IMG/VR virus record: IMGVR_UViG_3300046787_000286
Location: 62,001 to 126,000 of that record
Length of the DNA: 64,000 nucleotides
Direction: 5' to 3' (one strand)
Position numbers and translations under genes: made by a program. This document shows, in pieces, positions 5,053 through 15,909 of this stretch (within the stretch, counting starts at the first letter, position 1; every line of letters begins with the position of its first letter). The notes beneath the pieces are model-generated. The model was not told where the DNA came from, did not search any database, and saw only the letters and a program-made list of their open reading frames with translations.

Positions 5053-5054
5053 TA

Positions 5055-5252
5055 TTATTCTCCGATGTATTCACGAACCCAATCAAAGTGAGCTTCGTCT
5101 GCTTTAACCCACTTGAACTGTTCTCGACGACGGTTGATTTTGTCAAAGTCAAAACAGATAAAGATCCAGCCCTTGTCCTCTGAGAACATGACGGTATTTT
5201 GGACTTTGACAATCTGTACGATTTTGTCTTTCATCTTTGCTACTATCATCAT
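5055..5252 (-). CDS. hypothetical protein
   Basis: operon position behind a sigma70 promoter. Confidence 0.6.
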   Translation of the reverse strand: MMIVAKMKDKIVQIVKVQNTVMFSEDKGWIFICFDFDKINRRREQFKWVKADEAHFDWVREYIGE

Positions 5253-5281
5253 GCTAGATCCTTTTGCTTTGTTATGTGTAT

Positions 5282-5310
5282 ATTATAGCAAATCGGGCAT
5301 TTTTGGTCAA
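5282..5310 (-). promoter_or_regulatory. sigma70-type early promoter of the RNA-repair operon
   Basis: TTGACC-17-TATAAT. Confidence 0.8.
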
Positions 5311-5330
5311 CCAAAAAATGTAGTACTTAA

Positions 5331-5813
5331 TTACACATCGCCTTCGCGGGTTGGACTATCTTCTAATCCCCACTCAACGCCATTGATTGTGTGGGGCTCT
5401 GCTTCGTCATAAGTCCAACCCAGCGCCTTCATCATCTTGTGCTTGACAAGTAAGTTAGGACTACGAAATGCTTCAGTGTCATCAAAGCCTAACATTACCC
5501 CAATTTCTGCAACTGCACCCGAACGGCACACTCCTGCGTGGCAATGAACAATAACGTTCATGCGTTGACCGTATGCTTTGAGCAACAAGTCAACCAATTG
5601 CTTGGCCTGTTCATCTGTGCATTTGCATTCGTCTGGAAAGTTATCTTTGTCCTCAGCATCCAAGAATTCAAACTGATGAACTTCACGGAATTCATACTTG
5701 GGAACAGGAAACTCGTATGCTGGATCTACAATCTGAATCAGCATAGAGTTAATGCCGGGGGTAATATGAAACCCTTGACGAATGTCACTCATGCTTACAT
5801 TTTGAATCCACAT
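5331..5813 (-). CDS. protein-tyrosine/dual-specificity phosphatase-like protein
   Basis: HCHAGVCRS (CX5R) and FLD acid loop. Confidence 0.8.
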   Translation of the reverse strand: MWIQNVSMSDIRQGFHITPGINSMLIQIVDPAYEFPVPKYEFREVHQFEFLDAEDKDNFPDECKCTDEQAKQLVDLLLKAYGQRMNVIVHCHAGVCRSGAVAEIGVMLGFDDTEAFRSPNLLVKHKMMKALGWTYDEAEPHTINGVEWGLEDSPTREGDV

Positions 5814-5835
5814 AAAAAATCTCCTTTAATGCGTT

Positions 5836-5864
5836 ATTATAACACTAAAGGAGATTTTGGTCAA
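5836..5864 (-). promoter_or_regulatory. sigma70-type early promoter
   Basis: TTGACC-17-TATAAT. Confidence 0.8.
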
Positions 5865-5889
5865 GTACTACCTTAGTACTACTTTTGTT

Positions 5890-5964
5890 TGGTACCTGGT
5901 GACGGTTTCGAACCGCCGACCCGCTGCGTGTAAAGCAGCCGCTCTCCCCCTGAGCTAACCAGGC
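5890..5964 (-). tRNA. trnV: tRNA-Val(TAC)
   Basis: loop TTTACAC, CCA. Confidence 0.95.
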
Positions 5965-5972
5965 AAATTGTT

Positions 5973-6046
5973 TGGAGCGGGGTGCGGGAATCGAACCCGC
6001 AACTTCAACTTGGAAGGATGGTGTTTTACCACTAAACTAACCCCGC
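5973..6046 (-). tRNA. trnG: tRNA-Gly(TCC)
   Basis: loop CTTCCAA, U73, CCA. Confidence 0.95.
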
Positions 6047-6054
6047 ATTAAATC

Positions 6055-6130
6055 TGGCTCCCCAGCGTGGGATCGAACCACGGACACCTTGATTAACAGT
6101 CAAGTGCAACTACCGCTGTGCTACTGGGGA
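6055..6130 (-). tRNA. trnN: tRNA-Asn(GTT)
   Basis: loop CTGTTAA, CCA. Confidence 0.95.
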
Positions 6131-6139
6131 ATATTTTTT

Positions 6140-6229
6140 TGGCGGTGCGAAAGAGACTCGAACTCTTAAAGCGGCTTTCACCACTCGACGGATTAGCAAT
6201 CCGCTCCAATACCATTATGGGACCGCACC
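6140..6229 (-). tRNA. trnS: tRNA-Ser(GCT)
   Basis: loop TTGCTAA, long variable arm, G73, CCA. Confidence 0.95.
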
Positions 6230-6233
6230 AAAC

Positions 6234-6608
6234 TTAACAAGGTATCGAACTTAGTTCATCTACCTGCTGCCTAGTAATATAATGAACTTTTTTACCGTCC
6301 ATAATACTTATAGGCATATAAACTACTCTATCTATGTCTGACAGATAAACTGCCCAACAGTCGATTAAATCTCTATTAATAGCAACACCCTTCCCGTTTA
6401 CCATAGAAGATGCTGCTATTTCATATCTATCACCTCTTCCCGGTGATCTATATTTTATTTGCAATCTAAACAATCTACCCTCTGAATCAACTGCTATACA
6501 GTCAACTGGATTATAGTCATCAAACGGTGTAAACGCGGTAAATCCTTTGGTGTATAAGTCTCCTATAACTTTAATAAGTCCTAGGTTGCCTTTTTCATTA
6601 ACATTCAT
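6234..6608 (-). CDS. free-standing PD-(D/E)XK homing endonuclease (I-Ssp6803I-like)
   Basis: GNLG...PFDD...VDCIA...LQIKY motif order; inserted between tRNA genes. Confidence 0.75.
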   Translation of the reverse strand: MNVNEKGNLGLIKVIGDLYTKGFTAFTPFDDYNPVDCIAVDSEGRLFRLQIKYRSPGRGDRYEIAASSMVNGKGVAINRDLIDCWAVYLSDIDRVVYMPISIMDGKKVHYITRQQVDELSSIPC

Positions 6609-6685
6609 GTGTATCTCCTGCTATGTTTATTTAGCAGATGATGCATCTGTTTGAATTACCGTCCTGCCCGTCTTCCAATTATTCT

Positions 6686-6714
6686 ATTATATATCCAACT
6701 GCATGTGCAGTCAA
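6686..6714 (-). promoter_or_regulatory. sigma70-type promoter inside the tRNA array
   Basis: TTGACT-17-TATAAT. Confidence 0.8.
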
Positions 6715-6720
6715 CTATTT

Positions 6721-6803
6721 TGGTACCCCTGGTCAGATTCGAACTGACATATTATACTCCTCTGTTTGAGAGAGGCGACTTTACCAAGTTTGTCCACAGG
6801 GGC
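6721..6803 (-). tRNA. trnL: tRNA-Leu(CAA)
   Basis: loop CTCAAAC, variable arm, CCA. Confidence 0.95.
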
Positions 6804-6808
6804 ATTTA

Positions 6809-6883
6809 TGGTGGATGTAGCTAGATTCGAACTAGCGGTAGGCACCGTATGAAGATGCTGCATTACCACTTTGCTATACATCC
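6809..6883 (-). tRNA. trnM: tRNA-Met(CAT), non-initiator type
   Basis: loop TTCATAC, no GGG/CCC anticodon stem, CCA. Confidence 0.85.
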
Positions 6884-7000
6884 ATATAGAAGCACTCTCA
6901 AATGCAGGCCTAGGAGGAGTCAAGCTCTGAAACCTTTGCGTATGCATCCACTAGGGTCTCTTCTCCCGCTTTGACTTATGCTAAGAATACTTCTATATGG
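6882..7000 (-). ncRNA. stem-clamped spacer RNA A (between His CCA and Met 5' end)
   Basis: about 17-bp terminal stem CCATATAGAAGTATTCT/AGAGTGCTTCTATATGG with G-U pairs on the minus strand. Confidence 0.65.
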
Positions 7001-7073
7001 GGTGTTAGATGGGGAACGATCCCATACTATCGCTTTCACAGAGCAATGTGCAGACCACTACACTACTAACACC
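6998..7073 (-). tRNA. trnH: tRNA-His(GTG)
   Basis: loop CTGTGAA, G-1/C73, CCA. Confidence 0.9.
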
Positions 7074-7085
7074 ATAAATATTTTT

Positions 7086-7250
7086 GTGAAAACTTACTAC
7101 AGTCAAACACCAGCCGGATTAGACTTTCAATTGAGTCTAAGTGATGATGGCGTGTGTTGCATTATAGTTTACGACACTTACGATTGTGAACTTGTCATGC
7201 GCTATTTCACTAACGTCAATCGAGCTCTACGCTTTATCAACAATCTCTAA
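7086..7250 (+). CDS. small antisense-orientation hypothetical protein (54 aa)
   Basis: GTG start 5 nt after the late-promoter motif ATAAATA (7074-7080); the rest of track ORF 6978-7250 overlaps tRNA-His. Confidence 0.5.
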   Translation: MKTYYSQTPAGLDFQLSLSDDGVCCIIVYDTYDCELVMRYFTNVNRALRFINNL

Positions 7251-7252
7251 TA

Positions 7253-7381
7253 CCATATAGAAACACATTCTTGACGTAAAGGGTCTTTTCATCGCGCTGG
7301 TTAGGCTGCTTCATAGTGAGACTCAACTATTAACCAAGTTGCTCGAAGTCTACTATCAATGATGAATGCATTTCTATATGG
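7253..7381 (-). ncRNA. stem-clamped spacer RNA B
   Basis: CCATATAGAAATGCATTC/GAATGTGTTTCTATATGG terminal stem. Confidence 0.65.
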
Positions 7382-7566
7382 CATTTGTAAAGCCGGCTCA
7401 CTTTGAGCACCCTCGTCCTCCACGGACGGAGTTCTATTGTCATCATCAGTAGCATCCAACAACGCAGGGCCCATTGTTATCTTACTCTACCAACTTATCG
7501 CGTCCCTTGCTCATACCCGTCGGTAATCACTCAGGCTTTCATTTAAACTACAGCTTAACAAATACC
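7379..7566 (-). ncRNA. 188-nt structured RNA closed by a GGTATTTGTTAAGC/GCTTTACAAATGCC stem
   Basis: 14-bp terminal stem ending in ...GCCA; internal hairpins; no plausible ORF. Confidence 0.5.
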
Positions 7567-7692
7567 ATATGAAAACATTCTGTTGTGCTTGAAACAGTGA
7601 CAACCCATCTTCCTGGCAACTTTTACCTGTATAGTCGACTTCAGGGTTACTCGATGAACTCCAGTGTAGTTGTTCAGAATGTTTACATATAG
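7565..7692 (-). ncRNA. stem-clamped spacer RNA C
   Basis: CTATATGTAAACATTCTG/CAGAATGTTTTCATATGG terminal stem. Confidence 0.65.
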
Positions 7693-7792
7693 CAAGCTCA
7701 TTGTAGGCAGGGCTCGAACCTGCACACAGTCCTTACGGATAATGTCGCCCCTATAACGGGGCAATGTCTACCAATTCCATCACTACGAGCTC
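7690..7792 (-). pseudogene. Leu-type class II tRNA-like RNA with non-canonical anticodon loop and a CTA end
   Basis: D-arm GTGATGGAATTGGTAGACA, T-arm GCAGG-TTCGAGC-CCTGC, GCCCC-GTTATA-GGGGC hairpin, bulged acceptor stem. Confidence 0.6.
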
Positions 7793-7840
7793 CTGGAGTT
7801 AATTACTCTCCAGCATGGGTGTTACCTGCAGATAACACTT

Positions 7841-7949
7841 ACCATATGTAAACACACTAACGAACCTGGCTGTGGGCCGCGAACCCACTGTTTTCGCGTG
7901 GCACCAGCAAGTATTGCCACAATTACTGGTTAATGTGTTTGCATATGGT
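7841..7949 (-). ncRNA. stem-clamped spacer RNA D (after Lys CCA)
   Basis: ACCATATGCAAACACATTA/TAGTGTGTTTACATATGGT terminal stem. Confidence 0.7.
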
Positions 7950-8019
7950 AGGGCTGCGGGGTAATGATCCCCGTTCTACTGGTTAAAAGCCAGTTGCTTC
8001 ACCTTAAAGCTTCAACCCC
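7946..8019 (-). tRNA. trnK: tRNA-Lys(TTT)
   Basis: loop CTTTTAA, CCA. Confidence 0.95.
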
Positions 8020-8022
8020 ATA

Positions 8023-8098
8023 TGGTCCCTCTGGTGGGAGTCGAACCCACACGTCACGGATTAAGAGTCCGGCATGCTGCCTTAACATCTCAAAGGGA
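8023..8098 (-). tRNA. trnK: tRNA-Lys(CTT)
   Basis: loop CTCTTAA, CCA. Confidence 0.95.
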
Positions 8099-8207
8099 TG
8101 GATTGTAAAAATTGTCTTTTACGTGCCATCCCGGACCATACAGGGTACAGGGATGACACTAACGTTTACCTGAACGTTTCATATCAAAGTTTCCTTATAA
8201 AAAATTT

Positions 8208-8283
8208 TGGTGCCGAAGAATGGATTTGAACCAGTGACACACGGATTTTCAATCCGCTGCTCTACCAACTGAGCTACATCGGC
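8208..8283 (-). tRNA. trnF: tRNA-Phe(GAA)
   Basis: loop TTGAAAA, CCA. Confidence 0.95.
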
Positions 8284-8290
8284 AATTGTT

Positions 8291-8364
8291 TGGTGCTCTC
8301 ACCAGGTATCGATCCTGGGTTTCTACATTACCAATGTAGTGTAATGCCTTTATACTATGAGAGC
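8291..8364 (-). tRNA. trnT: tRNA-Thr(GGT)
   Basis: loop TTGGTAA, CCA. Confidence 0.95.
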
Positions 8365-8619
8365 TTATTCTTCGTCGACTTCTTCTGAGTCGATTACTAC
8401 AATATCTTCTGCATCGATGTCTTCTTCATCGATTTCGTCGAGTACAACTTCTGCTTCTTCAACTACAGGTGCAGCCACAGGTTTCTTAGGTCTACCCCAT
8501 GCCGAGTAACTTGCACCTTCTACTCTACCGCTTACATTCGGTTCAATTTTTTGAATAGTGCCTCCACGAGCTAAGAACTCCTGGATAGCAAGGTCGGTTG
8601 AATTGTCTCTGTTACTCAT
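8365..8619 (-). CDS. hypothetical protein with acidic C-terminal tail
   Basis: AAGGA RBS, start MSNRDNST; IQEFLARGG motif; D/E-rich tail. Confidence 0.7.
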   Translation of the reverse strand: MSNRDNSTDLAIQEFLARGGTIQKIEPNVSGRVEGASYSAWGRPKKPVAAPVVEEAEVVLDEIDEEDIDAEDIVVIDSEEVDEE

Positions 8620-8637
8620 ATGTTCCTTTAAGTTAAT

Positions 8638-8713
8638 TGGTCCGGCGTGCAGGAATCGAACCCACATTCATGAGGTAGAAGCTCATTGTACTATCCATTG
8701 TACTAACGCCAGA
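8638..8713 (-). tRNA. trnR: tRNA-Arg(TCT)
   Basis: loop CTTCTAC, CCA. Confidence 0.95.
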
Positions 8714-8715
8714 TA

Positions 8716-8816
8716 TGGTAGGAGCGGTGGGAATTGAACCCACGTTAACTGCCTTATCTAGACAGTGCTTACGGCTGTATAAGGGCCGCCCTTAGGCCAA
8801 CATTAGCAACACTCCC
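8716..8816 (-). tRNA. atypical 101-nt class II tRNA with TAT anticodon
   Basis: 7-bp acceptor stem, T-arm GTGGG-TTCAATT-CCCAC, loop CTTATAC, about 28-nt variable arm, A73, CCA. Confidence 0.7.
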
Positions 8817-8907
8817 ATTGAAAAACACACTTAGACGTAGTAGTTCTTTAGTCCACTAAGATACACGACTACCACTCGTGTCATTAGTTAAATGTGTTTA
8901 TCAATGG
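8815..8907 (-). ncRNA. stem-clamped spacer RNA E (between Glu CCA and the TAT tRNA)
   Basis: CCATTGATAAACACATTT/AAGTGTGTTTTTCAATGG terminal stem. Confidence 0.65.
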
Positions 8908-8979
8908 AGTCGCATACGGGTTACGATCCCGTCTGGTCACCTTGAAAGGGTGATGACCTCACCAGAAGTCTAATGCGAC
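8905..8979 (-). tRNA. trnE: tRNA-Glu(TTC)
   Basis: loop CTTTCAA, CCA. Confidence 0.9.
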
Positions 8980-8988
8980 ATTGTTGAA

Positions 8989-9206
8989 TTTGTAAGTAGT
9001 TGAGCCACTTTTATCTCAACTTTTTTCCTGATTATACAAGTCCGGACAGGGGGCGGCATGACACTTGGGATACTAAGTCCAGCGTGGCAACCATACTGCA
9101 CCGATCCTTTCGGATCAGCCGGGAGTCGAACCCGCTTGCCTTTTACTACACAACACCTTCGAAGAATATTGAATAGCGTGACATTCTCTTGCTGACACTT
9201 ACAAAA
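8989..9206 (-). ncRNA. about 215-nt structured RNA with an internal T-arm
   Basis: terminal TTTGTAAGT/ACTTACAAA stem; GGG-TTCGACT-CCC at 9121-9133; GATCC-GAAA-GGATC hairpin. Confidence 0.55.
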
Positions 9207-9207
9207 T

Positions 9208-9281
9208 TGGTGGAGGATAACAGAATCGAACTGTTGCGAAAACCTTGCAAAGGTCCCAGGCTACCACTACATCAATCCCCC
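9208..9281 (-). tRNA. trnA: tRNA-Ala(TGC)
   Basis: loop TTTGCAA, GGG start, CCA. Confidence 0.95.
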
Positions 9282-9292
9282 GAATTTTTTAC

Positions 9293-9367
9293 TGGAGCCT
9301 TTGTAAAGAATCGAACTTCAGTTCCCGGCTTCGTAGACCAGTGTATTATCCATTATACGACAAAGGC
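9293..9367 (-). tRNA. trnR: tRNA-Arg(ACG)
   Basis: loop CTACGAA, CCA. Confidence 0.95.
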
Positions 9368-9374
9368 AAATTGT

Positions 9375-9447
9375 TAGGCCCCGGAGGGAGGAATCGAACC
9401 TCCATTGGTTGTATACGGACCGTGTTACCATTACACTACAACCGGGA
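9375..9447 (-). pseudogene. degenerate tRNA-like element
   Basis: intact D-arm GTGTAATGGTAACAC and T-arm GGAGG-TTCGATT-CCTCC; weak anticodon arm; ends in CCTA. Confidence 0.6.
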
Positions 9448-9453
9448 TATAGG

Positions 9454-9604
9454 TTTTTGAGAGTTCCAACTATCTTTCTCAAGGACTCGCCGGGCTTGTC
9501 TCGTATGAGGGAGTTTAAACTACCTTGTGTTGCTACTGGTGTGTCAGTCTCAAGAATAGGGACCTAGCGCACAAGGGACTCAACCTCTACGTCTATCTCA
9601 AAAA
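9454..9604 (-). ncRNA. about 150-nt spacer RNA closed by TTTTTGAGA/TCTCAAAAA
   Basis: 9-bp terminal inverted repeat directly after the tRNA-Thr CCA. Confidence 0.45.
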
Positions 9605-9605
9605 T

Positions 9606-9679
9606 TGGTGCCCCATAACAGAATCGAACTGCTATCCCCGGATTACAAAACCGGTGTTCTACCATTTAACTAATGGGGC
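9606..9679 (-). tRNA. trnT: tRNA-Thr(TGT)
   Basis: loop TTTGTAA, CCA. Confidence 0.95.
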
Positions 9680-9686
9680 AAATTGT

Positions 9687-9765
9687 TGGCTCCGTGTGTG
9701 AGATTCGAACTCACCTAGTCACTGATTAACAGTCAGGTCCTTGCACCTAGCTTGGATTTCACGGA
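9687..9765 (-). tRNA. trnN: tRNA-Asn(GTT), second copy
   Basis: loop CTGTTAA, CCA. Confidence 0.9.
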
Positions 9766-9772
9766 ATAAAAT

Positions 9773-9978
9773 TGGCGTTCCTTGTAGATTTTCACTACTG
9801 CTACACTAACGAGAGCGTTACAAGTCTTCCTTATCGTGCAGCTGGTTAGGCCTATTGTCAGGAGTTACGAAGCGTTTAGTATTCAGATCTGACCTGCGAC
9901 CAAGCAGCGATGCCTGTCAACTACTACTTCACCTTGCAGAGCACTGAGAGCTCGCTGTGTCATCCTTTACGGAGGAAC
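9773..9978 (-). ncRNA. 206-nt CCA-tailed RNA with acceptor/T-arm mimic
   Basis: GTTCCT/AGGAAC stem + G + CCA; GTAG-TGAAAAT-CTAC arm immediately 5' of the acceptor strand. Confidence 0.6.
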
Positions 9979-9985
9979 ATAAAAT

Positions 9986-10060
9986 TGGCGGTCCCAGGGG
10001 GTAACGATCCCCCTCCTCAGCAGTGACAGTGCTGTGTGCGTCCATGAACACCTTGAGACC
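9986..10060 (-). tRNA. trnD: tRNA-Asp(GTC)
   Basis: loop CTGTCAC, G73, CCA. Confidence 0.95.
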
Positions 10061-10065
10061 TAAAT

Positions 10066-10138
10066 TAAGAAAAACACATTGTAAGGGGTTCTCTGGTCAC
10101 CTCTACACGCTTTTGTATACGCAATGTGTCTTATATGG
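10066..10138 (-). ncRNA. stem-clamped spacer RNA F (after Tyr CCA)
   Basis: AAGACACATTG/CAATGTGTTTT stem. Confidence 0.5.
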
Positions 10139-10220
10139 TGGAGGTGGCTGGACTTGAACCAACAATGCACAAGGGCGGCGGATTTACAGTCCACTGGGGA
10201 TACCATTTTCCTACACCTCC
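10136..10220 (-). tRNA. trnY: tRNA-Tyr(GTA)
   Basis: loop CTGTAAA, variable arm, CCA. Confidence 0.95.
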
Positions 10221-10324
10221 ATAATTCTTCTGCCGACCGGACCTGCCCCGATAATATACTAGATACGTTAAATCTAGCCTTTCTAATGATACGTGCTTTC
10301 TTCACACGAATGACGACAAATTCT

Positions 10325-10408
10325 TGGTAGGACCGACCGGAATCGAACCGGTACGCATTACGCGGCAGATTTTAAGTCTGCTGTGGCTACCTATTACACC
10401 ACGGTCCC
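10325..10408 (-). tRNA. trnL: tRNA-Leu(TAA)
   Basis: loop CTTAAAA, variable arm, CCA. Confidence 0.95.
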
Positions 10409-10501
10409 ATAAATTGTTCTGGCGGTGCGAAACCATCTGCACACTTACGCCTCTTAGCTTCTCACACCCGGGTGTTTACGCTTGGGTCATCGCCTGAAAC
10501 T

Positions 10502-10592
10502 TGGTGGACAACAATGGGAATCTAACCCACTTCTCCCTCCTATGCTATTAGGAAGTTTCAGCACAGCATCAGTGCATCACGACAGTAAGTCC
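10502..10592 (-). ncRNA. CCA-tailed tRNA-like RNA with altered T-loop
   Basis: GGAC/GTCC + A + CCA; GTGGG-TTAGATT-CCCAT arm; no recognisable anticodon arm. Confidence 0.5.
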
Positions 10593-10599
10593 ATAAACT

Positions 10600-10630
10600 T
10601 GGAAGAGCGTAGGGGAGTCGAACCCCTCTA
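10600..10630 (-). pseudogene. orphan tRNA 3' fragment (T-arm, acceptor strand, U73, CCA), Cys-like
   Basis: AGGGG-TTCGACT-CCCCT-ACGCTCT-T-CCA fused to the HNH stop codon; no matching 5' half seen nearby. Confidence 0.6.
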
Positions 10631-11065
10631 CAAGTCTTCTAAATCTTTTATACTCAAACTGGCTCGGTTAGTTTTTCCACTGCCCCAGCCAGTTTGCAAT
10701 CCTTTTAGCATATTTGCTTTTGCCTCTGGGCTAGCGTTTCTGCTACCCCATGTGTCTGTTTGTGTATGACAGTTAGGACAAAGCCAAGTCACATTGTCAA
10801 TGGTATTGTTTTTTGGATCGCCGTCGATATGTTCTAACTGGAGAACTAATTTCTTGCCATTCCAATCACTAATACCACAACAACTGCACTTATACTCTGA
10901 AAATCTCTTTAGATAAGTTTTAGCATTGCCTTTATTGGCTTTGCCACTTTCCATTATAGTTTTTATCCTATAATCTTGAGTGCATTCTCTACTACAAAAA
11001 TGCCCTGATTGTTGCGAATCAAAATACTTGTATTCTGTGTTGCAACTTTTACACAATCCAATCAT
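10628..11065 (-). CDS. HNH homing endonuclease with Zn-ribbon N-terminus
   Basis: CxxC motifs; LQLEHIDGDPKNN...LCPNCH. Confidence 0.9.
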   Translation of the reverse strand: MIGLCKSCNTEYKYFDSQQSGHFCSRECTQDYRIKTIMESGKANKGNAKTYLKRFSEYKCSCCGISDWNGKKLVLQLEHIDGDPKNNTIDNVTWLCPNCHTQTDTWGSRNASPEAKANMLKGLQTGWGSGKTNRASLSIKDLEDL

Positions 11066-11107
11066 TGGTTAGTTCTCCTTGCATTTATTTAGCAAACTAA
11101 CCAATAA

Positions 11108-11182
11108 TGGTACTCCGAAGGAGAATCGAACTCCTCTTTCCGCCTTGAAAGGGCAGCGTCCTAACCGATAGACGACCGGAGC
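11108..11182 (-). tRNA. trnE: tRNA-Glu(TTC), second copy
   Basis: loop CTTTCAA, CCA. Confidence 0.95.
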
Positions 11183-11190
11183 ATAATAAA

Positions 11191-11425
11191 CACTATACAT
11201 AAACACATTGGGATGATTGACAACAACCTATCTAGGCTAACCACGCTATCGTCTAGCGACTGGCTGTCAAACACATTACAATCCTACCTGGTCCAGCGTG
11301 ACTACTGATCAAAGCCTAAGCCGATTTCCATCTTTCATGTAACATAGCACGGCTGACACGGCTGTCAACATCGCGATGCTATTGTTACCTACTGGGGCGG
11401 TAACCCAATGCGTTTGTGTATAGTG
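11191..11425 (-). ncRNA. stem-clamped RNA G (235 nt)
   Basis: CACTATACACAAACGCATTGGG/CCCAATGTGTTTATGTATAGTG, about 22-bp terminal stem. Confidence 0.65.
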
Positions 11426-11501
11426 TCCGGAACTGAATCCGGATTCACTATACAAAAATAAATTTTTAATGAACATTAGCTAGTTGCCTAACTAAGTGTC
11501 T

Positions 11502-11670
11502 AGTATAACATGATTGCCGATACTAGTCAATTTATTTGTTGCAAGTCCTTACACTTTGTAGGGTTACTTGGTATTCAGTTAGTTGCCTAACTTCCTAACT
11601 AGCCTCTAGTATAACACTCTTTTGATAAGTGGTCTACCACAAAATATTAACCCTACGCAATGTAGGGTTA
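11502..11670 (-). promoter_or_regulatory. tandem sigma70 promoters, each preceded by a palindromic box
   Basis: TTGACT-17-TATACT (11502-11530) and TAGACC-17-TATACT (11608-11636); TAACCCTAC-N5-GTAGGGTTA at 11648-11670 and a variant at about 11544-11566. Confidence 0.7.
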
Positions 11671-11691
11671 TGTAATACTTTTGTTTGTAGA

Positions 11692-11767
11692 TGGTCTCCA
11701 TAGAAGGATTTGAACCTTCACCACATGCTCCCAAAGCATGGACGCTACCAGGTTACGCCATACGGAG
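11692..11767 (-). tRNA. trnP: tRNA-Pro(TGG)
   Basis: loop TTTGGGA, CCA. Confidence 0.95.
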
Positions 11768-11772
11768 ATAAA

Positions 11773-11994
11773 TTATTTTACTTTTGGTTCTTTTGATTTG
11801 TCAAGCTCATGTGGCTCAGCAAATCTTGTAGGTGGATGGTCAAATGTTAGCCCCATCGACTTAAACCAACCTAATGGTTTCCAGTACTTGTGTATAATGT
11901 TGTTGACTATAACTAACCCAACAATGATTACAACAAAACCCATCATTGTCAATACTGACCCGGCTAAAAATACCGCTGCTTGATCCATGTCCAT
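11773..11994 (-). CDS. small single-pass membrane protein
   Basis: hydrophobic AAVFLAGSVLTMMGFVVIIVGLVIV stretch; AAGGA RBS. Confidence 0.65.
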   Translation of the reverse strand: MDMDQAAVFLAGSVLTMMGFVVIIVGLVIVNNIIHKYWKPLGWFKSMGLTFDHPPTRFAEPHELDKSKEPKVK

Positions 11995-12009
11995 AATTTT
12001 TAAAGTCCT

Positions 12010-12086
12010 TTGGAGCGGGCAAAGAGACTCGAACTCTCGACATCTTCCTTGGCAAGGAAGTGCTCTACCAACTGAGCTATACCCGC
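12010..12086 (-). tRNA. trnG: tRNA-Gly(GCC)
   Basis: loop TTGCCAA, U73, CCA. Confidence 0.95.
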
Positions 12087-12136
12087 ATTATATTTTACTT
12101 ATTATACAACACTCTTGCTGTGTTGTAAAGACATTT

Positions 12137-12213
12137 TGGTGCCGCCACGTGAACTCGAATCACGGACCTTCCGCTTATCAAGCGGATGCTCTAACCAACT
12201 GAGCTATGGAGGC
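12137..12213 (-). tRNA. trnI: tRNA-Ile(GAT), second copy
   Basis: loop TTGATAA, CCA. Confidence 0.95.
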
Positions 12214-12218
12214 ATATT

Positions 12219-12307
12219 TGGAGGAAGGATGGTAGAATCGAACTCCAACCGCTTTCGCAGTCCATCTGTTTTCAAGACAGTGCAGGGCCCAGCCCTGATA
12301 ACCTTCC
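12219..12307 (-). tRNA. trnS: tRNA-Ser(TGA)
   Basis: loop CTTGAAA, variable arm, CCA. Confidence 0.9.
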
Positions 12308-12313
12308 ATGTTG

Positions 12314-12387
12314 TGGTCTGGGTAGGAAGAATCGAACTTCCGCATCAAGTATCCAAGACTCGGAGACTACCACTATCTTATACCCAG
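12314..12387 (-). tRNA. trnP: tRNA-Pro(TGG), second copy
   Basis: loop CTTGGAT, CCA. Confidence 0.9.
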
Positions 12388-12394
12388 ATTGTTT

Positions 12395-12469
12395 TGGTGG
12401 ACCGTAGGAGAATCGAACTCCTGCTAAAGCGTTGCAAACGCCCTGTGCTACCATTATCACTAACAGCCC
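12395..12469 (-). tRNA. trnA: tRNA-Ala(TGC), second copy
   Basis: loop TTTGCAA, G3-U70, CCA. Confidence 0.95.
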
Positions 12470-12478
12470 ATAAATTGT

Positions 12479-12552
12479 TGGCACGGGAACTAGGGATCGA
12501 ACCTAGGACGACAGAGTCAAAGTCTGTTGTGTTACCTCTACACCATTCCCGA
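12479..12552 (-). tRNA. trnQ: tRNA-Gln(TTG)
   Basis: loop CTTTGAC, CCA. Confidence 0.95.
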
Positions 12553-12908
12553 ACAAATTTTTAACGCACTGTTGCCAATGCGTGTATTAAAAAGCACAGA
12601 TGTCTATGCTCTTTAATACGCTGGGTTTTTTCACACACCACAAAAGGTGCTTCTCATCCCCCAGGCCGCCCTCATTCTAGATTTTTATAGTGACTCTACG
12701 GCTCGCGTTGCCTAACCACTGTTGCTTAACCCAAGACCGGAGTCTTGCGTCTAGCCTTAAACTGTGCTGTTGCACGTTCTAGCTTCTGAGTAATGAGCGT
12801 TTGTCTTTGCTCAGAAGTTAAAGTATGCGTCCTCAACCAATCCTTCTTATCGTTGGGTATGGATTTTACTATGTCTGTCATTAATTGTCAATTCCTACTT
12901 TAGTTTTA

Positions 12909-12947
12909 CAAAACAAAAAACCCTAGGAGTTTTAGTCCTAGGGTCCT
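12909..12947 (-). terminator. intrinsic terminator (candidate attenuator)
   Basis: ACCCTAGGA-CTAAAAC-TCCTAGGGT followed by TTTTTGTTTT. Confidence 0.75.
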
Positions 12948-12969
12948 TTAGTTTGTAAGTTACTTGCTG

Positions 12970-13119
12970 TTAAGCGTAACCTGCTCCCTCGGACCCTAAG
13001 ATAATCTCTGGTGTGCGATCATTACTATTCATTCCTGATGCAAACCATACGGCGGGGCATGTGCCCAAGCCTTTAGCCTGTGTCTGGAGTGATAACGAAT
13101 AATAATGTATGTTGTTCAT
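12970..13119 (-). CDS. 49-aa leaderless leader-peptide candidate
   Basis: MNNIHYYSLSLQTQAKGLGTCPAVWFASGMNSNDRTPEIILGSEGAGYA; ATG is 6 nt after a TATAAT box. Confidence 0.55.
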   Translation of the reverse strand: MNNIHYYSLSLQTQAKGLGTCPAVWFASGMNSNDRTPEIILGSEGAGYA

Positions 13120-13125
13120 GTTAGT

Positions 13126-13154
13126 ATTATATGTGTTTATTTATACCTTGTCAA
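13126..13154 (-). promoter_or_regulatory. overlapping sigma70 and late promoter
   Basis: TTGACA-17-TATAAT with TATAAATA inside the spacer. Confidence 0.8.
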
Positions 13155-13204
13155 CCTAGTGTTGAGCTTTTATTTAGCCTTTTGGCAAAATTAGTTTGAT
13201 TATG

Positions 13205-13387
13205 TTATGATTTTCGTCTAGAACAGTTGGGATCATTGCAAACACTAATTCTCTTGCGATCACAGTGTGGACAATCTTTTGCGATCATCCATGTTTTTAA
13301 AAACATGGGTTTTTCATTCTTACCCGGTTTATCATTGCCTGAACATTGCGTGTAAATCATAATAGCCTCCTTGGCTACTATATACAA
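13205..13387 (-). CDS. small Cys-rich (Zn-finger-like) protein
   Basis: CPHC...CNDPNC. Confidence 0.45.
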   Translation of the reverse strand: MYIVAKEAIMIYTQCSGNDKPGKNEKPMFLKTWMIAKDCPHCDRKRISVCNDPNCSRRKS

Positions 13388-13421
13388 CGCCTTGCAAGTT
13401 ACTTACGTTGACACAAAAGGT

Positions 13422-13449
13422 AAAAAAGAATGCCCGCCGAAACGGGCAT
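13422..13449 (-). terminator. intrinsic terminator after the tmRNA coding piece
   Basis: ATGCCCG-TTTCGG-CGGGCAT-TCTTTTTT. Confidence 0.85.
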
Positions 13450-13835
13450 GGTTGTTTAGGTTACAAGGTAAGTCCTACCCCGGGTGCATGGGTTATTAAG
13501 CCAATACAGCAGCACGACGAGCGATTTTTACACCGCGAGCGTTGATAGCTACTTCACCTTTTGTATTTGCGTTTGCATTTACGTTTTTTTGCGTCTACGG
13601 CCGAGTTCCCCCAACCCTACGGCTTCTGCTTTGCCGAGCTGTCCACTTGTTTACTTGTTGCCCTGTCGAAACCATGGCAGGCCCATTATAAAACACACTA
13701 TTCCGTTATCCCACGTCTAGAACGATAACTGGGGCTCCGTAGAGCTAATGTGTTTTATGGTGGACCTGGCGGGAGTCGAACCCGCGTCCAGAACACTTTT
13801 CTCTTTGCTTCTTTCCTTACGGTTTTTACAGCAAT
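13450..13835 (-). ncRNA. ssrA: circularly permuted (two-piece) tmRNA
   Basis: acceptor piece ending GCGGGTTCGACTCCCGCCAGGTCCACCA (13758-13835) precedes the coding piece starting GGGCCTGCCATGGTTTCGAC (13684); G3-U70; tag ORF ANANTKGEVAINARGVKIARRAAVLA (13496-13576); promoter TTGACT-17-TATAAT at 13842-13870. Confidence 0.9.
13683..13760 (-). ncRNA. tmRNA intervening segment, equivalent to stem-clamped spacer I
   Basis: CCATAAAACACATTA/TAGTGTGTTTTATAATGG stem. Confidence 0.7.
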
Positions 13836-13872
13836 ACAACAATTATATATGACTTCTTTTAAAAAGTCAATA

Positions 13873-13895
13873 GAAAAGCCCACCGAAGTGGGCTT
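13873..13895 (-). terminator. intrinsic terminator
   Basis: AAGCCCAC-TTCG-GTGGGCTT-TTC. Confidence 0.8.
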
Positions 13896-13915
13896 AATAG
13901 TTAATCTAGTTTAGA

Positions 13916-14464
13916 TTAGAAGCCGAAACTTAGACCTAAACCAAATGCTTTCTCTTTGATATCCTGAGCAGAACGGCTTGCATTTAAGTTAACTGCAACA
14001 TTCTTTGCGACTGGCAAAGAGTATGTTGCAAATGAAACTGTTTGCTTAGTACGTGCGCCGTCTTCAGTTGAACCTACACGAGTCTTTGCACCCAACAACA
14101 AGAAGCCTGGACCGACTGGGCGACCATAAGTTGCACCAACTAAGCCATAGTTGAAACTTGCGCCACCGTTGAAGCCATTGTCATGACCAGCACCGATGAA
14201 TGGAGTAATACCTGCGATGTTAACCTTGTTGTTAGCAACAGTAGTTTCCAAACTGTTCACAACAACGCCGTCATTAAAACGTGCGGTTCGAGATTGCAAG
14301 TTGACTTGGTAGTCACCGAAGCCTTTTCCAGCACGAATATATTGGGCTGTGCTGTCAGTTGCACCTTTGCGACCTTGTACGTTTTCAACGTCAACTGATA
14401 CAAAGTCTACTGCAAAAGCAGAGCTAGAAATGGCCAAAGCCAAGATTGCGAAGATTTTTTTCAT
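13916..14464 (-). CDS. outer-membrane beta-barrel protein
   Basis: MKK signal peptide with AFA cleavage site, alternating beta-strands, C-terminal GLSFGF (BamA signal); sigma70 promoter at 14504-14532. Confidence 0.75.
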   Translation of the reverse strand: MKKIFAILALAISSSAFAVDFVSVDVENVQGRKGATDSTAQYIRAGKGFGDYQVNLQSRTARFNDGVVVNSLETTVANNKVNIAGITPFIGAGHDNGFNGGASFNYGLVGATYGRPVGPGFLLLGAKTRVGSTEDGARTKQTVSFATYSLPVAKNVAVNLNASRSAQDIKEKAFGLGLSFGF

Positions 14465-14546
14465 GTAATTTCCTTTTAGTTAAAATGACTTGCGTCACTT
14501 TACATTATATATTCGTAGCTACGTTAAGTCAAGTAAAAACGACAAA

Positions 14547-15101
14547 TTACTTGTTGGTGTCTTCTACAGGAACCCATCCTAATTTAAAAAAGTCTTCTCG
14601 GATCTCATCTGTGACACAGCTTTCACTAACATACTTGACAATGTCCATGCCTTGCTCTAGAGCCGATGCTATCTGCTGTTCAGTAAGCTCGCCTTTAATT
14701 CCTGAGCAGTACCAATCAATGTAGTCCCCAGACTCTACCATGTCAGCAACAATACCCCCGGCATAACGCCAGGAGCAAGAGTAAGTTTGCCCTTTCAGCA
14801 GCGGCCACACATCATTCTTTTGCCAGTCTTGATTGCACAAGGCAGCATAGATATTTTGTGCATAGCTTTCACGAGACTTAGCTTTGTCGCAGATCCACTC
14901 AGTGCTACGAAGATCATATTCCAAATTGTTCTGTTGCCACTCGGGCTCGGCTTCTTTTTTCTTAACCATATCACTCCACACACGCTCCCGCTCAATGGTT
15001 TGTCGAACTTCTTCATCAGTGTTGGGATCGCGCCCTTCTGCTATTACATCGTCGATGCGACACTTGCTGTGAAAGGTACCTTTAATGGGACTTGAGTTCA
15101 T
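14547..15101 (-). CDS. hypothetical phage protein
   Basis: long ORF downstream of a tRNA and promoter. Confidence 0.7.
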   Translation of the reverse strand: MNSSPIKGTFHSKCRIDDVIAEGRDPNTDEEVRQTIERERVWSDMVKKKEAEPEWQQNNLEYDLRSTEWICDKAKSRESYAQNIYAALCNQDWQKNDVWPLLKGQTYSCSWRYAGGIVADMVESGDYIDWYCSGIKGELTEQQIASALEQGMDIVKYVSESCVTDEIREDFFKLGWVPVEDTNK

Positions 15102-15119
15102 ATAGCTAAGAAAGTTAAA

Positions 15120-15194
15120 TGGTGCGACTGGAGGATTACGATACCTCGACCCAGCGATTATGAGTCGCTTGCTCTTCCTCTGAGCTACAGTCGC
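15120..15194 (-). tRNA. trnI: tRNA-Ile2(CAT), lysidine type
   Basis: AGCGA-CTCATAA-TCGCT arm typical of Ile2; CCA; promoter at 15203-15231. Confidence 0.8.
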
Positions 15195-15227
15195 TTATGT
15201 GTATTATACAACTATCCTAGATAATTG

Positions 15228-15611
15228 TCAATTGTAATTATCTAAAAACTTTTCCAAATCGCCGTATAAGTTAACTAACACAGCTTCACGGCTGCTAAAG
15301 AAAATTAGTTTAGCGACTCTTTGTTTTTCTACTTTGATGTAGTATGGCATTTGCAGCCTACGATCTAACTCTAAAATAGTTTTTTGGTTAAATCTAGACT
15401 TTGCCGGAATGTCAAATTCGTAGAACTCTATCTCTAACTCTTTAACAAATGCATCGTACCCATGTTTGGTTAAACGCATGCCACCGTTTTCTCTAAAGTT
15501 GTACCACCAAGTTATCCTTGCTTGGTCCACAGTCCAACTACCTGGTGGCAGTTTCTCCACCAGTTGTCGGGTGAGCTCTACCTTATCGCGCACCTGGGTA
15601 GATTTGTTCAC
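15228..15611 (-). CDS. hypothetical protein
   Basis: ORF in co-directional operon. Confidence 0.7.
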   Translation of the reverse strand: MNKSTQVRDKVELTRQLVEKLPPGSWTVDQARITWWYNFRENGGMRLTKHGYDAFVKELEIEFYEFDIPAKSRFNQKTILELDRRLQMPYYIKVEKQRVAKLIFFSSREAVLVNLYGDLEKFLDNYN

Positions 15612-15879: not shown

Positions 15880-15909
15880 AACAATATTTATCCAAGAAAA
15901 CGGCGCAGT

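What the first reader, a model, noticed from the sequence alone, without database searches (positions are those of the whole stretch)
6882..13760. Family of at least 8 stem-clamped spacer RNAs attached to tRNA/tmRNA CCA ends
Seen: eight non-coding units (6882-7000, 7253-7381, 7565-7692, 7841-7949, 8815-8907, 10066-10138, 11191-11425, 13683-13760) share a 12-22 bp terminal stem with consensus CCA-TAT/TT-x-AAACACATT ... AGTGTGTTT-x-ATA-TGG. Their interiors (about 45-190 nt) are unrelated but each is hairpin-rich. Seven start at the CCA (once CTA) of an upstream RNA, and four end on the 5' GG of the next RNA. Stem mismatches read as G-U on the minus strand but A-C on the plus strand, which points to RNA-level selection on the transcribed strand. 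One member is the intervening segment of the permuted tmRNA. Inference: a conserved clamp delivers variable small-RNA cargoes released by tRNA processing (RNase P/RNase III-like or a phage enzyme), i.e. a tRNA-punctuated small-RNA cassette array. I cannot assign it to a known RNA family.
Basis: partly seen in the sequence, partly recalled or inferred. Interest (0 to 1): 0.9.

Follow-up and report, generated by a model that had tools for sequence, protein, structure and literature searches.

The report
Conserved hairpin clamps between phage tRNAs
An uncultured jumbo phage, and at least 70 related metagenomic phage contigs, carry a previously undescribed family of RNA hairpins in their tRNA gene arrays: each starts at the CCA end of one tRNA, is closed by the same 18-base-pair stem, and holds an interchangeable interior whose function is unknown.

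Summary
All eight units lie on the minus strand, the strand of the tRNAs, and share the terminal stem. A covariance model built only from other phages finds five of them at E of 1e-4 or better, one marginally and one weakly. The eighth is too long for the model, but six related arrays hold members of the same ~210-250-nt class.

The family is widespread: about 130 units in about 70 IMG/VR contigs, all inside one-strand tRNA arrays. It is absent from Rfam and GenBank phages. Among 120 matches in bacterial genomes, only three short MAG contigs hold real units.

The clamp is a sharply bounded 18-bp helix:
- pairs 7, 8, 9 and 18 covary;
- G-U pairs occur on the tRNA strand;
- position 8 is usually not a Watson-Crick pair (mostly A-C).

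Most units with a recognised upstream tRNA follow Lys, Glu or Gln; the commonest downstream tRNA is Met. Interiors turn over as cassettes. They are unrelated between near-identical flanks, identical copies occur in different tRNA contexts, and they are never inverted. Some interior classes are conserved and show compensatory changes.

Best reading: a co-transcribed, self-folding spacer module excised during tRNA and tmRNA end maturation, whose repeated arms also allow interiors to be exchanged by recombination. Whether the interiors act in trans is untested.

The parts
6882..7000 (-). Clamp unit 1. It runs from the CCA of tRNA-His (6998-7072) to the GG that starts tRNA-Met (6809-6883). The stem is 19 bp with several G-U pairs.
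   Evidence: z -4.2; 28.8 bits, E 8e-5; plus strand 20.5 bits
7253..7381 (-). Clamp unit 2. Its interior belongs to a class conserved in L002, L003, L031 and L043, with compensatory changes. It starts at the CCA of a 183-nt non-tRNA RNA.
   Evidence: z -5.0; alignment A4; 17 of 45 pairs, the clamp's own pairs included, changed on both sides; 36.3 bits
7565..7692 (-). Clamp unit 3, a divergent member. It starts at CUA after a tRNA-like gene. The stem has a U-U mismatch at position 8.
   Evidence: I10; z -1.5; 12 bits, E 0.27
7841..7949 (-). Clamp unit 4. It starts at the CCA of tRNA-Lys(UUU) (7946-8019). It has a C-A mismatch at position 8, and its interior holds a hairpin that resembles a tRNA T arm.
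   Evidence: z -4.4; 42 bits, E 5e-8
8815..8907 (-). Clamp unit 5. It runs from the CCA of tRNA-Glu (8905-8979) to the GG of a long-arm tRNA (8716-8816). The same interior class sits in a tandem array before tRNA-Arg in L031, L056 and L061.
   Evidence: class 3; z -4.7; 38.6 bits
10066..10138 (-). Clamp unit 6, a decayed member between tRNA-Tyr and tRNA-Asp. Only the 11-bp upper stem is kept.
   Evidence: z -1.6; 17.6 bits, E 0.01-0.045
11191..11425 (-). Clamp unit 7. A 22-bp stem encloses an interior of about 190 nt. The interior belongs to a conserved structured class (~210-250 nt units) that in three of the five related arrays (L016, L023, L060), as here, lies upstream of tRNA-Glu (5-91 nt).
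   Evidence: I2; z -4.5; alignment A3; 18 of 40 pairs changed on both sides
13683..13760 (-). Clamp unit 8. It is the intervening loop of the permuted tmRNA, between the CCA of the acceptor piece and the 5' GGG of the coding piece.
   Evidence: z -3.5; 35.2 bits; Rfam RF04321 alignment places it in the loop
5890..15194 (-). The host structure: a one-strand array of about 30 tRNA genes plus the permuted tmRNA (13405-13850). It holds several sigma-70-like promoters and a few small ORFs.

Best explanation
The units are a new family of self-folding spacer RNAs co-transcribed with phage tRNAs and the tmRNA.

A conserved 18-bp basal helix begins with the 3' CCA of the upstream RNA. It ends with U followed by the first Gs of the downstream RNA. 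The whole insert is therefore folded away from its neighbours, and the upstream 3' end is brought next to the downstream 5' end.

Inferred mechanism:
1. RNase P cuts after the conserved U(-1) at the 3' foot of the clamp.
2. An endonuclease cuts at or just after CCA. It could be RNase E acting on the weak A/U-rich lower stem with its mismatch at position 8, an RNase Z/BN-type or RNase III-type enzyme, or a phage enzyme.
3. The tRNA ends mature and the hairpin is released as a discrete small RNA.

The conserved arm sequence would be the recognition determinant. Most interiors are free to vary, and a minority of interior classes are themselves conserved structured RNAs.

Because the arms are repeated near-identical 17-22-nt sequences in one orientation, they also act as sites of homologous exchange. 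This swaps interiors and reshuffles tRNA blocks among co-infecting phages.

Shown: the anatomy, the conservation, the strand bias, the turnover and the positions. Inferred: the cleavages, the enzymes and any trans function.
For: - Distribution: the exact 17-mer occurs in 82 IMG/VR contigs. 74 of them have the paired arm, and all of those lie in one-strand tRNA arrays.
- Position: 161 units were scanned, and 100 start exactly at a tRNA CCA. 33 end on nucleotides 1-2 of the next tRNA.
- Clamp geometry: the helix stops sharply at 18 bp. Positions 1-7 and 9-18 are paired in at least 91% of units, and position 19 in about 55%.
- Covariation: it is seen at pairs 7, 8, 9 and 18. 95.4% of cells pair, and 0 of 500 shuffles reach the observed covariation.
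- Strand bias: sense-strand G-U pairs far outnumber A-C outside positions 8-9. Sense folds are more stable than antisense in 61 classes against 20 for whole units, and in 57 against 23 for interiors. In the window, the model scores the tRNA strand higher for every unit it detects.
- Conservation order: arms 94% identical, flanking tRNA ends 88%, interiors 72% and bimodal.
- Persistence: the Lys-unit-Met and Glu-unit-Leu positions persist in L004 and L005, where the neighbouring protein is 89% and 60% identical.
- tmRNA: one unit is the intervening loop of the permuted tmRNA. A working tmRNA needs a free CCA end and a 5' end made by RNase P exactly at the clamp's two feet.
- Exchange: flanks and clamp are identical but interiors unrelated in L002 against L003. 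An identical 69-nt unit sits in Tyr-Ala, x-Met and x-His contexts.
- Orientation: 85 related interior pairs share orientation and none is inverted.
- Conserved interior classes with compensatory changes.
Against: - There are no expression or end-mapping data, because the phage is uncultured.
- The clamp is 18 bp, shorter than the roughly two helical turns usually quoted for RNase III (from memory). No nuclease gene could be tied to the family.
- A blunt stable hairpin abutting CCA might hinder 3' trimming rather than help it.
- Arm sequence conservation beyond what pairing requires would equally fit a DNA-level site.
- A strand composition bias (a G-rich sense strand) could contribute to the sense-versus-antisense stability difference.
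- Many units share ancestry, so the counts are not independent events.
Confidence: 0.5

Rival explanations
1. The units are selfish, MITE-like palindromic DNA elements. Their terminal inverted repeats are the arms. They insert at the tRNA-tRNA junction (CCA-TAT-GG, itself a palindrome) and are tolerated because the transcript folds on itself.
For: - Identical 69-nt copies occur in unrelated tRNA contexts.
- Tandem arrays of five to six units are joined by TAA linkers.
- The bare junction CCA-TAT-GG occurs in these arrays, once in this window and six times at Lys-Lys junctions across the loci.
- HNH and PD-(D/E)XK endonuclease genes lie inside the array.
- A cargo-less 43-nt clamp exists.
Against: - Orientation is fixed: 85 related pairs the same way round, none inverted.
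- There is no target-site duplication. CCA and UGG are inverted and form part of the stem.
- No orthologous empty site was found.
- No longer element with the same ends and an ORF was seen.
- There are 82 interior classes among 121 distinct units, unlike a homogeneous MITE family.
- G-U pairs favour the sense strand.
- Occupancy of the same two junctions persists in L004 and L005, where the neighbouring protein is 89% and 60% identical.
Confidence: 0.18
2. The units are a scaffolded small-RNA display system. The constant clamp is only the processing handle. The released interiors are the payload: trans-acting structured RNAs (decoys, aptamers, sponges or tRNA-like molecules) that are exchanged between phages under an arms race.
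For: - Interiors are structured beyond shuffled controls.
- Several classes are conserved across phages with compensatory changes and conserved single-stranded blocks.
- Interiors are replaced wholesale between near-identical flanks.
- Apart from one empty clamp, interiors are never shorter than 27 nt.
- 6 of 81 classes carry a canonical T-arm next to the 3' arm, against 0.9 expected.
Against: - No antisense complementarity was found to about 1 Mb of related phage DNA or to the rest of the window.
- Anticodon-loop mimics are not enriched.
- Many interiors have no detectable relative.
- One empty clamp exists.
- Nothing shows that the RNAs are stable.
Confidence: 0.2
3. The arms function purely at the DNA level, as recombination or cruciform sites that shuffle tRNA blocks. 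This would resemble the PeSL cassettes of T4-type phages. Alternatively they are transcription signals (promoter, terminator or antiterminator).
For: - Arm sequence is conserved beyond what pairing needs.
- Contexts are chimeric, sharing only one flank.
- PeSL-mediated shuffling is documented in T4-type phages (PMC2839356, PMC4122927).
- The dominant 5' arm reads TATAAAAA, which is close to the T4 late promoter as I recall it.
Against: - Pair covariation and the sense-strand G-U bias point to a folded RNA.
- No sigma-70-like match lies in seven of the eight units; the one in unit 7 (11368-11341) is in its interior, not its arms. No U-tract terminator coincides with a clamp: the only terminator-like matches inside units (4 and 8) are on the plus strand.
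- The window's own clamps lack TATAAAAA, and that motif is not placed upstream of genes here.
- The distance between arms varies from 9 to about 200 nt.
Confidence: 0.1

Closest known systems
T4 RNAC and RNAD (species 1 and 2 RNAs) in the T4 tRNA cluster
   Same: They are non-tRNA stable RNAs co-transcribed with phage tRNAs in a phage of the T4 superfamily and processed from the same precursor. Their function remains unknown (PMC3014915, PMC2330249).
   Different: I fetched and folded the T4 RNAs. They have no clamp sequence, no 18-bp basal stem flush with a CCA, are single copy, and show no variable-interior architecture.
tRNA-linked hairpin RNAs of murine gammaherpesvirus 68 (TMERs) and bacterial tRNA spacer RNAs (3'ETS-leuZ sponge)
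   Same: In both, small RNAs are encoded directly beside a tRNA or tRNA-like unit and are freed by tRNA end-processing enzymes (PMC4838037; bioRxiv 10.1101/2021.04.25.441314; PMC6191717).
   Different: TMERs are eukaryotic Pol III units feeding the miRNA pathway. The E. coli spacers have no shared scaffold. Here one constant 18-bp clamp recurs around many unrelated interiors, and no processing has been demonstrated.
Co-transcribed repeat hairpins of bacteria (Correia/NEMIS, ERIC, REP)
   Same: They are repeated inverted-repeat elements that fold into long RNA hairpins within transcripts. From memory, some are cut by RNase III or RNase E.
   Different: Those families have homogeneous interiors, insert in both orientations, and some have target duplications. 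Here the interiors are heterogeneous, the orientation is fixed, the position is tied to tRNA CCA ends, and the elements are found only in phages.
PeSL mobile regulatory cassettes of T4-type phages
   Same: They are short conserved motifs, repeated in a T4-type genome, that serve as exchange points between otherwise unrelated sequences (PMC2839356, PMC4122927).
   Different: PeSLs are promoter-plus-terminator composites that flank ORFs as direct repeats. The clamps are inverted arms around non-coding interiors inside tRNA arrays, and no promoter or terminator match lies in the arms.
Intervening loop of permuted (two-piece) tmRNA genes; processing stems of rRNA operons
   Same: Unit 8 occupies exactly the tmRNA loop that has to be excised. 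As in rRNA operons, flanking sequences pair to enclose an RNA that is cut out.
   Different: The Rfam consensus loop is a stretch of about 23 A/U-rich nucleotides, whereas here it is a 73-nt family member. The tmRNA loops of phage loci L027 and L033 are stem-closed but with other sequences.
Large ornate RNAs near phage tRNAs (GOLLD, ROOL)
   Same: They are structured non-coding RNAs of unknown function that, as I recall, often sit beside tRNA genes in phages and prophages.
   Different: They are single large RNAs of 500-800 nt with their own Rfam models. Neither matched the window, even at E up to 5 over positions 1-16000.

Membership tests
Any Rfam 15 family | A match to a curated covariance model | tested here: not met
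   At the gathering threshold only tRNA and tmRNA_permuted matched. At E up to 5 over positions 1-16000 nothing overlapped a unit, apart from the tmRNA models that span unit 8.
MITE / terminal-inverted-repeat transposon derivative | Terminal inverted repeats | tested here: met
   The arms are 17-22 nt and about 94% identical between copies.
MITE / terminal-inverted-repeat transposon derivative | Target-site duplication as direct repeats, and empty sites in relatives | tested here: not met
   The flanks are CCA and UGG, which are inverted and paired. No orthologous empty site exists among 93 loci.
MITE / terminal-inverted-repeat transposon derivative | Insertion in either orientation, and a homogeneous interior | tested here: not met
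   85 related interior pairs share orientation and none is inverted. There are 82 interior classes among 121 distinct units.
RNase III-type processing stem | A double-stranded stem of about two helical turns enclosing the released RNA | tested here: inconclusive
   The conserved helix is 18 bp with an internal mismatch at position 8. Extension beyond it varies.
RNase III-type processing stem | Staggered cleavage in the stem | not testable with these tools
   This needs end mapping or in vitro cleavage.
tRNA-punctuated or tRNA-linked small RNA (TMER-like, ETS/ITS-derived) | The RNA abuts a tRNA end within one transcript | tested here: met
   100 of 161 units start at a tRNA CCA, and 33 end on tRNA nucleotides 1-2. 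The promoter and terminator positions leave the units inside operons.
tRNA-punctuated or tRNA-linked small RNA (TMER-like, ETS/ITS-derived) | Release by RNase P or RNase Z, and a stable product with a trans function | not testable with these tools
   The only support is indirect: the tmRNA needs these cuts.
PeSL cassette | A composite of an early promoter and a terminator stem-loop | tested here: not met
   No sigma-70-like match lies in any clamp arm (one lies in the interior of unit 7), and no minus-strand U-tract terminator coincides with a clamp.
Integron attC-like site | An integrase and ORF cassettes between the sites | tested here: not met
   The interiors are 27-200 nt and non-coding. 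The ten proteins near the array scanned against PHROGs and the ten scanned against Pfam gave no integrase family.
Permuted tmRNA intervening loop | A position between the CCA of the acceptor piece and the 5' end of the coding piece | tested here: met
   This applies to unit 8 only. The RF04321 alignment scores 91 bits.

The most novel reading that the evidence does not exclude
A phage system in which one constant processing scaffold, the 18-bp clamp anchored on tRNA CCA ends, expresses a recombinationally shuffled library of structured small RNAs. Some of these are arranged in tandem arrays. They would serve as interchangeable trans-acting effectors (decoys, sponges or tRNA-like molecules) in phage-host or phage-phage conflict. 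In bacterial terms this would be a counterpart of polycistronic hairpin-RNA clusters.
Probability: 0.15. Interest if true: 0.9.

Novelty: new variant of a known kind. Interest (0 to 1): 0.64.

Why it matters
Phage tRNA arrays are usually read as simple lists of tRNA genes. This family shows that, in a large clade of uncultured jumbo phages, the long spacers are themselves organised. A single RNA motif is more conserved than the tRNA ends beside it, it marks defined junctions, and it carries interiors that turn over rapidly.

- It is a clean candidate for a new RNA family, with about 130 instances, covariation and a defined boundary.
- It gives a concrete handle on how long polycistronic tRNA and tmRNA precursors are matured in phages.
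- It offers a possible mechanism for how tRNA arrays are reshuffled.
- If the interiors prove functional, it would reveal a new way in which phages express small RNAs.

Tried and rejected
- **Promoter idea.** The dominant 5' arm reads TATAAAAA, which resembles the T4 late promoter. The window's own clamps lack it, and the motif is not placed upstream of genes here. No sigma-70-like site lies in any clamp arm (one falls in the interior of unit 7) and no minus-strand terminator coincides with a clamp.
- **Anticodon-nuclease decoy idea.** It was prompted by the Lys/Glu/Gln bias. Anticodon-loop-like heptamers are not enriched in the interiors.
- **Antisense regulator idea.** No minus-strand matches of interiors were seen (none among the 60 best matches listed) against about 1 Mb of related phage DNA plus 47 kb of the window.
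- **Cultured relatives.** Megablast and blastn against 50,697 GenBank phages returned only chance hits.
- **Host origin.** Of 120 exact 17-mer hits in bacterial genomes, only three carry the paired arm. All three lie on short MAG contigs, which I take to be binned phage DNA.
- **Similarity to T4 rnaC and rnaD.** None.
- **Empty-site search.** No orthologous tRNA pair lacking the unit was found.
- **Link to the PD-(D/E)XK gene.** Its more distant homologues (49-60% identity, L006-L011) sit in arrays without family members. A sequence search of the PDB gave nothing, so my recollection that this Pfam family includes a tRNA-intron homing endonuclease remains unverified.
- **First alignment of the ~230-nt class.** It used wrong-strand coordinates for three loci and was redone.

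Full report
**Setting.** The window is part of IMG/VR contig IMGVR_UViG_3300046787_000286, which is 214 kb long (L001 is 100% identical). Its DNA polymerase is at most 52% identical to any polymerase of a GenBank phage. The nearest are Sinorhizobium phage Phosso and Agrobacterium phage Atu_ph07. The region has no nucleotide relative among 50,697 phage records. It is therefore an uncultured jumbo phage of the wider T4-like group. Positions 5890-15194 hold a one-strand (minus) array of about 30 tRNA genes and a permuted tmRNA, with several strong sigma-70-like promoters.

**Check of the observation.** Read on the minus strand, each of the eight intervals is an insert closed by a terminal stem with a shared sequence: 5' CCA-UAU-R-x-AAACACAUU ... 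ARUGUGUUU-x-Y-AUA-UGG 3'.
- Four units start at the CCA of a canonical tRNA (His, Lys, Glu, Tyr). One starts at the CCA of the tmRNA acceptor piece, one at the CCA of a 183-nt non-tRNA RNA, and one at CUA after a tRNA-like gene.
- Units 1 and 5 end on the GG that starts the next tRNA. Unit 8 ends three bases before the GGG of the tmRNA coding piece.
- Rfam's permuted-tmRNA model places unit 8 in the intervening loop.
- The units fold with the clamp closed, with z-scores from -1.5 to -5.0.
- Units 6 (10066-10138) and 3 (7565-7692) are degenerate.

**Independent test.** I built covariance model R1 from 40 units of other phages only (alignment A5) and searched the window.
- Five units score 28.8-42 bits (E from 8e-5 to 5e-8), unit 6 scores 17.6 bits, and unit 3 scores 12 bits with filters off.
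- Unit 7 is too long for the model. Nothing else in the 64 kb matches.
- Every detected unit scores higher on the tRNA strand.

**The family beyond this genome.** The plus-strand 17-mer of unit 2 occurs exactly in 82 IMG/VR contigs.
- In 74 of them the complementary arm lies 40-430 nt away. Those contigs carry one-strand arrays of up to 35 tRNAs, whereas the eight without a partner carry almost none. The eight partnerless hits give a rough chance background.
- A symmetric scan, allowing up to four mismatches to either arm on the tRNA strand, found 161 units, 121 of them distinct.
- R1 found 246 matches counting both strands, which is about 130 sites in 73 loci.
- Contigs reach 364 kb.
- The family is absent from GenBank phages. 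Among 120 chance-level 17-mer hits in 185,579 bacterial and archaeal genomes, only three have the partner arm. All three lie on MAG contigs of 1.5-2.8 kb. I conclude that the family is specific to phages.

**Anatomy of the clamp.**
- Positions 1-7 and 9-18 are paired in at least 91% of the 121 distinct units. Position 19 drops to about 55%, and the register is lost beyond that, so the helix has a sharp 18-bp boundary.
- Pair 18 covaries freely (A-U 39, C-G 31, G-C 20, U-A 9). Pair 7 is A-U 89, U-A 24, G-C 5. Pair 16 is U-A 54, U-G 52, C-G 15.
- On A5, 95.4% of cells pair and 7 of 18 pairs change on both sides. No shuffle out of 500 reaches the observed covariation, and versions with the partners slid by one to three columns pair at only 28-62%.
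- Outside positions 8-9, sense-strand G-U pairs (about 90 cells) far outnumber A-C (about 4).
- Position 8 is the exception: A-C 59, G-C 31, A-U 16, U-U 5, C-A 4.
- The lower stem is almost entirely A/U, and the upper stem (ACACAUU/AGUGUGU) is stronger.
- Sense RNA folds more stably than antisense RNA in 61 of 82 interior classes against 20 (p about 3e-8). For interiors alone the split is 57 against 23. A G-rich sense strand may contribute to this.

**Position.**
- Of 126 non-redundant contexts, 76 begin at the CCA of an ARAGORN tRNA: Lys 33, Glu 14, Gln 7, Leu 7 and others. Lys, Glu and Gln together make up only about 15% of the tRNA genes in these loci.
- The commonest downstream tRNAs are Met (19) and His (6).
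- Many 'non-tRNA' upstream contexts are tRNA-like genes that end in NCCA.
- The architecture tRNA-Lys, 3 nt, tRNA-Lys, unit, then tRNA-Met recurs in L001-L005. Glu-unit-Leu recurs in L004, L005, L041, L043 and in the window. The neighbouring protein is only 60% identical in L005.
- Spacer lengths in these arrays are bimodal, either under 20 nt or 70-100 nt.
- The bare junction CCA-TAT-GG, itself a palindrome, also occurs.

**Interiors.**
- BLAST clustering gives 82 classes among 121 distinct units.
- Unit length is 63-139 nt (mode about 80), with a few units of 190-250 nt. A single cargo-less clamp of 43 nt lies after tRNA-Met in L041.
- Turnover is cassette-like. L002 and L003 have identical flanks and clamps but wholly unrelated interiors of 83 and 50 nt.
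- Of 12 orthologous pairs, five have unrelated interiors. One pair has identical interiors despite 14 differences in 80 flank positions.
- An identical 69-nt unit lies in Tyr-Ala, x-Met and x-His contexts in seven contigs, and other classes also move between contexts.
- Tandem arrays occur: in L031, five to six units are joined by TAA linkers, with UUA replacing CCA at internal starts.
- Orientation never flips: 85 related pairs share orientation and none is inverted.
- Some classes are clearly constrained:
  - the class of unit 2 keeps long single-stranded blocks and shows compensatory changes;
  - the ~210-250-nt class of unit 7 does likewise, and in three of the five related arrays it lies upstream of tRNA-Glu, as it does here;
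  - the commonest Lys-linked class has a covarying hairpin with a CCGG loop.
- Six of 81 classes carry a canonical T-arm placed against the 3' arm, against 0.9 expected. Predicted architecture is otherwise heterogeneous, with one to three hairpins.

**Interpretation.** The sharp helix boundary, the covariation, the strand-specific G-U pairs, the fixed orientation and the registration on CCA and G+1 all point to a folded RNA made with the tRNAs.

The tmRNA case is the most informative. A two-piece tmRNA needs a free CCA end and a 5' end made by RNase P at exactly the two feet of the clamp. At least there, then, the unit must be excised (inference and the established biology of permuted tmRNA). 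The U before the downstream G fits the RNase P preference as I recall it.

Which enzyme frees the CCA end is unknown. The weak A/U-rich lower stem with its conserved mismatch would suit RNase E access. An 18-bp helix is short for RNase III. An RNase Z/BN-type cut after CCA is also possible. I therefore favour a cis-acting insulation-and-processing module (confidence about 0.5).

The arms are more conserved than the adjacent tRNA ends (94% against 88%). This argues for sequence-specific recognition. The same repeated arms are the obvious substrate for the exchange of interiors and for array reshuffling. That is analogous to PeSL-mediated shuffling in T4-type phages (PMC2839356, PMC4122927).

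**Rivals.**
- A simple MITE is disfavoured by the fixed orientation, the lack of a target duplication, the lack of empty sites and the heterogeneous interiors.
- A promoter or terminator role is not supported.
Conserved interior classes favour it. The empty clamp, the absence of antisense targets and the absence of anticodon-loop mimicry do not.

**Comparison with known systems.** The nearest analogues are:
- T4 RNAC and RNAD, whose function is unknown (PMC3014915; I checked them and they are not clamp-like);
- tRNA-linked viral hairpin RNAs (TMERs, PMC4838037);
- sRNA sponges derived from tRNA spacers (bioRxiv 10.1101/2021.04.25.441314);
- co-transcribed bacterial repeat hairpins;
- rRNA-type processing stems.

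None has one constant clamp around many interchangeable interiors at tRNA CCA ends. There is no Rfam family for it. I rate it a new variant of a known kind: a solid candidate RNA family whose mechanism is still unproven.

Noticed in passing
window 7382-7564 (-) and 7693-7840 (-): Two non-tRNA elements lie between clamp units. One is a 183-nt RNA that starts GG, ends GCCA and is closed by a 9-bp stem. The other is a tRNA-like gene with a 6-nt 'anticodon' loop and a long variable arm, ending GCUA instead of CCA and preceded by two hairpins. L002 and L003 carry a comparable 130-nt tRNA-like element between two units.
   Followed up: partly
window 8980-9207, 9446-9605 (-); L006; L027 and L033 tmRNA genes: Long inserts after a CCA that do not belong to the family are also closed by terminal stems of unrelated sequence. 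This includes the intervening loops of two other phage permuted tmRNAs. Stem closure therefore looks like a general rule for inserts in phage tRNA arrays.
   Followed up: partly
window 2039-5813 (-): A gene cluster resembling an RNA-repair set lies beside the array: an Rnl1-type RNA ligase (3141-4088), an AAA_33 kinase (4039-4500), a weak match to a dual-specificity phosphatase (5331-5813) and an RNaseH_like PF04308 protein (2039-2530). It recalls the T4 Pnk/Rnl1 pathway for tRNA-Lys repair.
   Followed up: partly
window 6234-6608, 8365-8667, 10628-11065 (-): Three small ORFs sit inside the tRNA array: a PD-(D/E)XK endonuclease (PF11645), an acidic protein with a SutA RNA-polymerase-binding domain, and an HNH endonuclease. 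The PD-(D/E)XK gene is kept beside tRNA arrays in L001-L011, including arrays that have no clamps.
   Followed up: partly
window 11191-11425 (-), with relatives in L016, L020, L023, L030 and L060: The interior of unit 7 is a conserved structured RNA with several invariant blocks and compensatory pairs (units of this class are ~210-250 nt). It has no Rfam match. In three of the five related arrays (L016, L023, L060), as here, it lies upstream of tRNA-Glu.
   Followed up: partly
window 11418-11456 (-): A short hairpin just upstream overlaps the 5' arm of unit 7 (GUAUAGUG ... CACUAUAC). It offers an alternative pairing for that arm.
   Followed up: no
window 12220-12307 (-): A tRNA-Sec-like gene scores 45.9 bits, just under Rfam's 47-bit cut-off. 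ARAGORN did not call it.
   Followed up: no
L041 2149-2191: A cargo-less 43-nt clamp (a 17-bp stem with a 9-nt loop) lies directly after tRNA-Met. It is followed at once by a TTGACA-17-TACAAT promoter.
   Followed up: partly
L031 4850-5446 (tRNA-strand coordinates; also L056 and L061): A tandem array of five to six clamp units lies between tRNA-Lys and tRNA-Arg. The units are joined by TAA linkers, and a degenerate tRNA-like element follows the first unit.
   Followed up: partly
window 13405-13850 (-): For the phage-encoded permuted tmRNA, ARAGORN reads an unusually long tag peptide that ends AAVLA. Relatives in L027 and L033 encode shorter tags that end FALAA.
   Followed up: no
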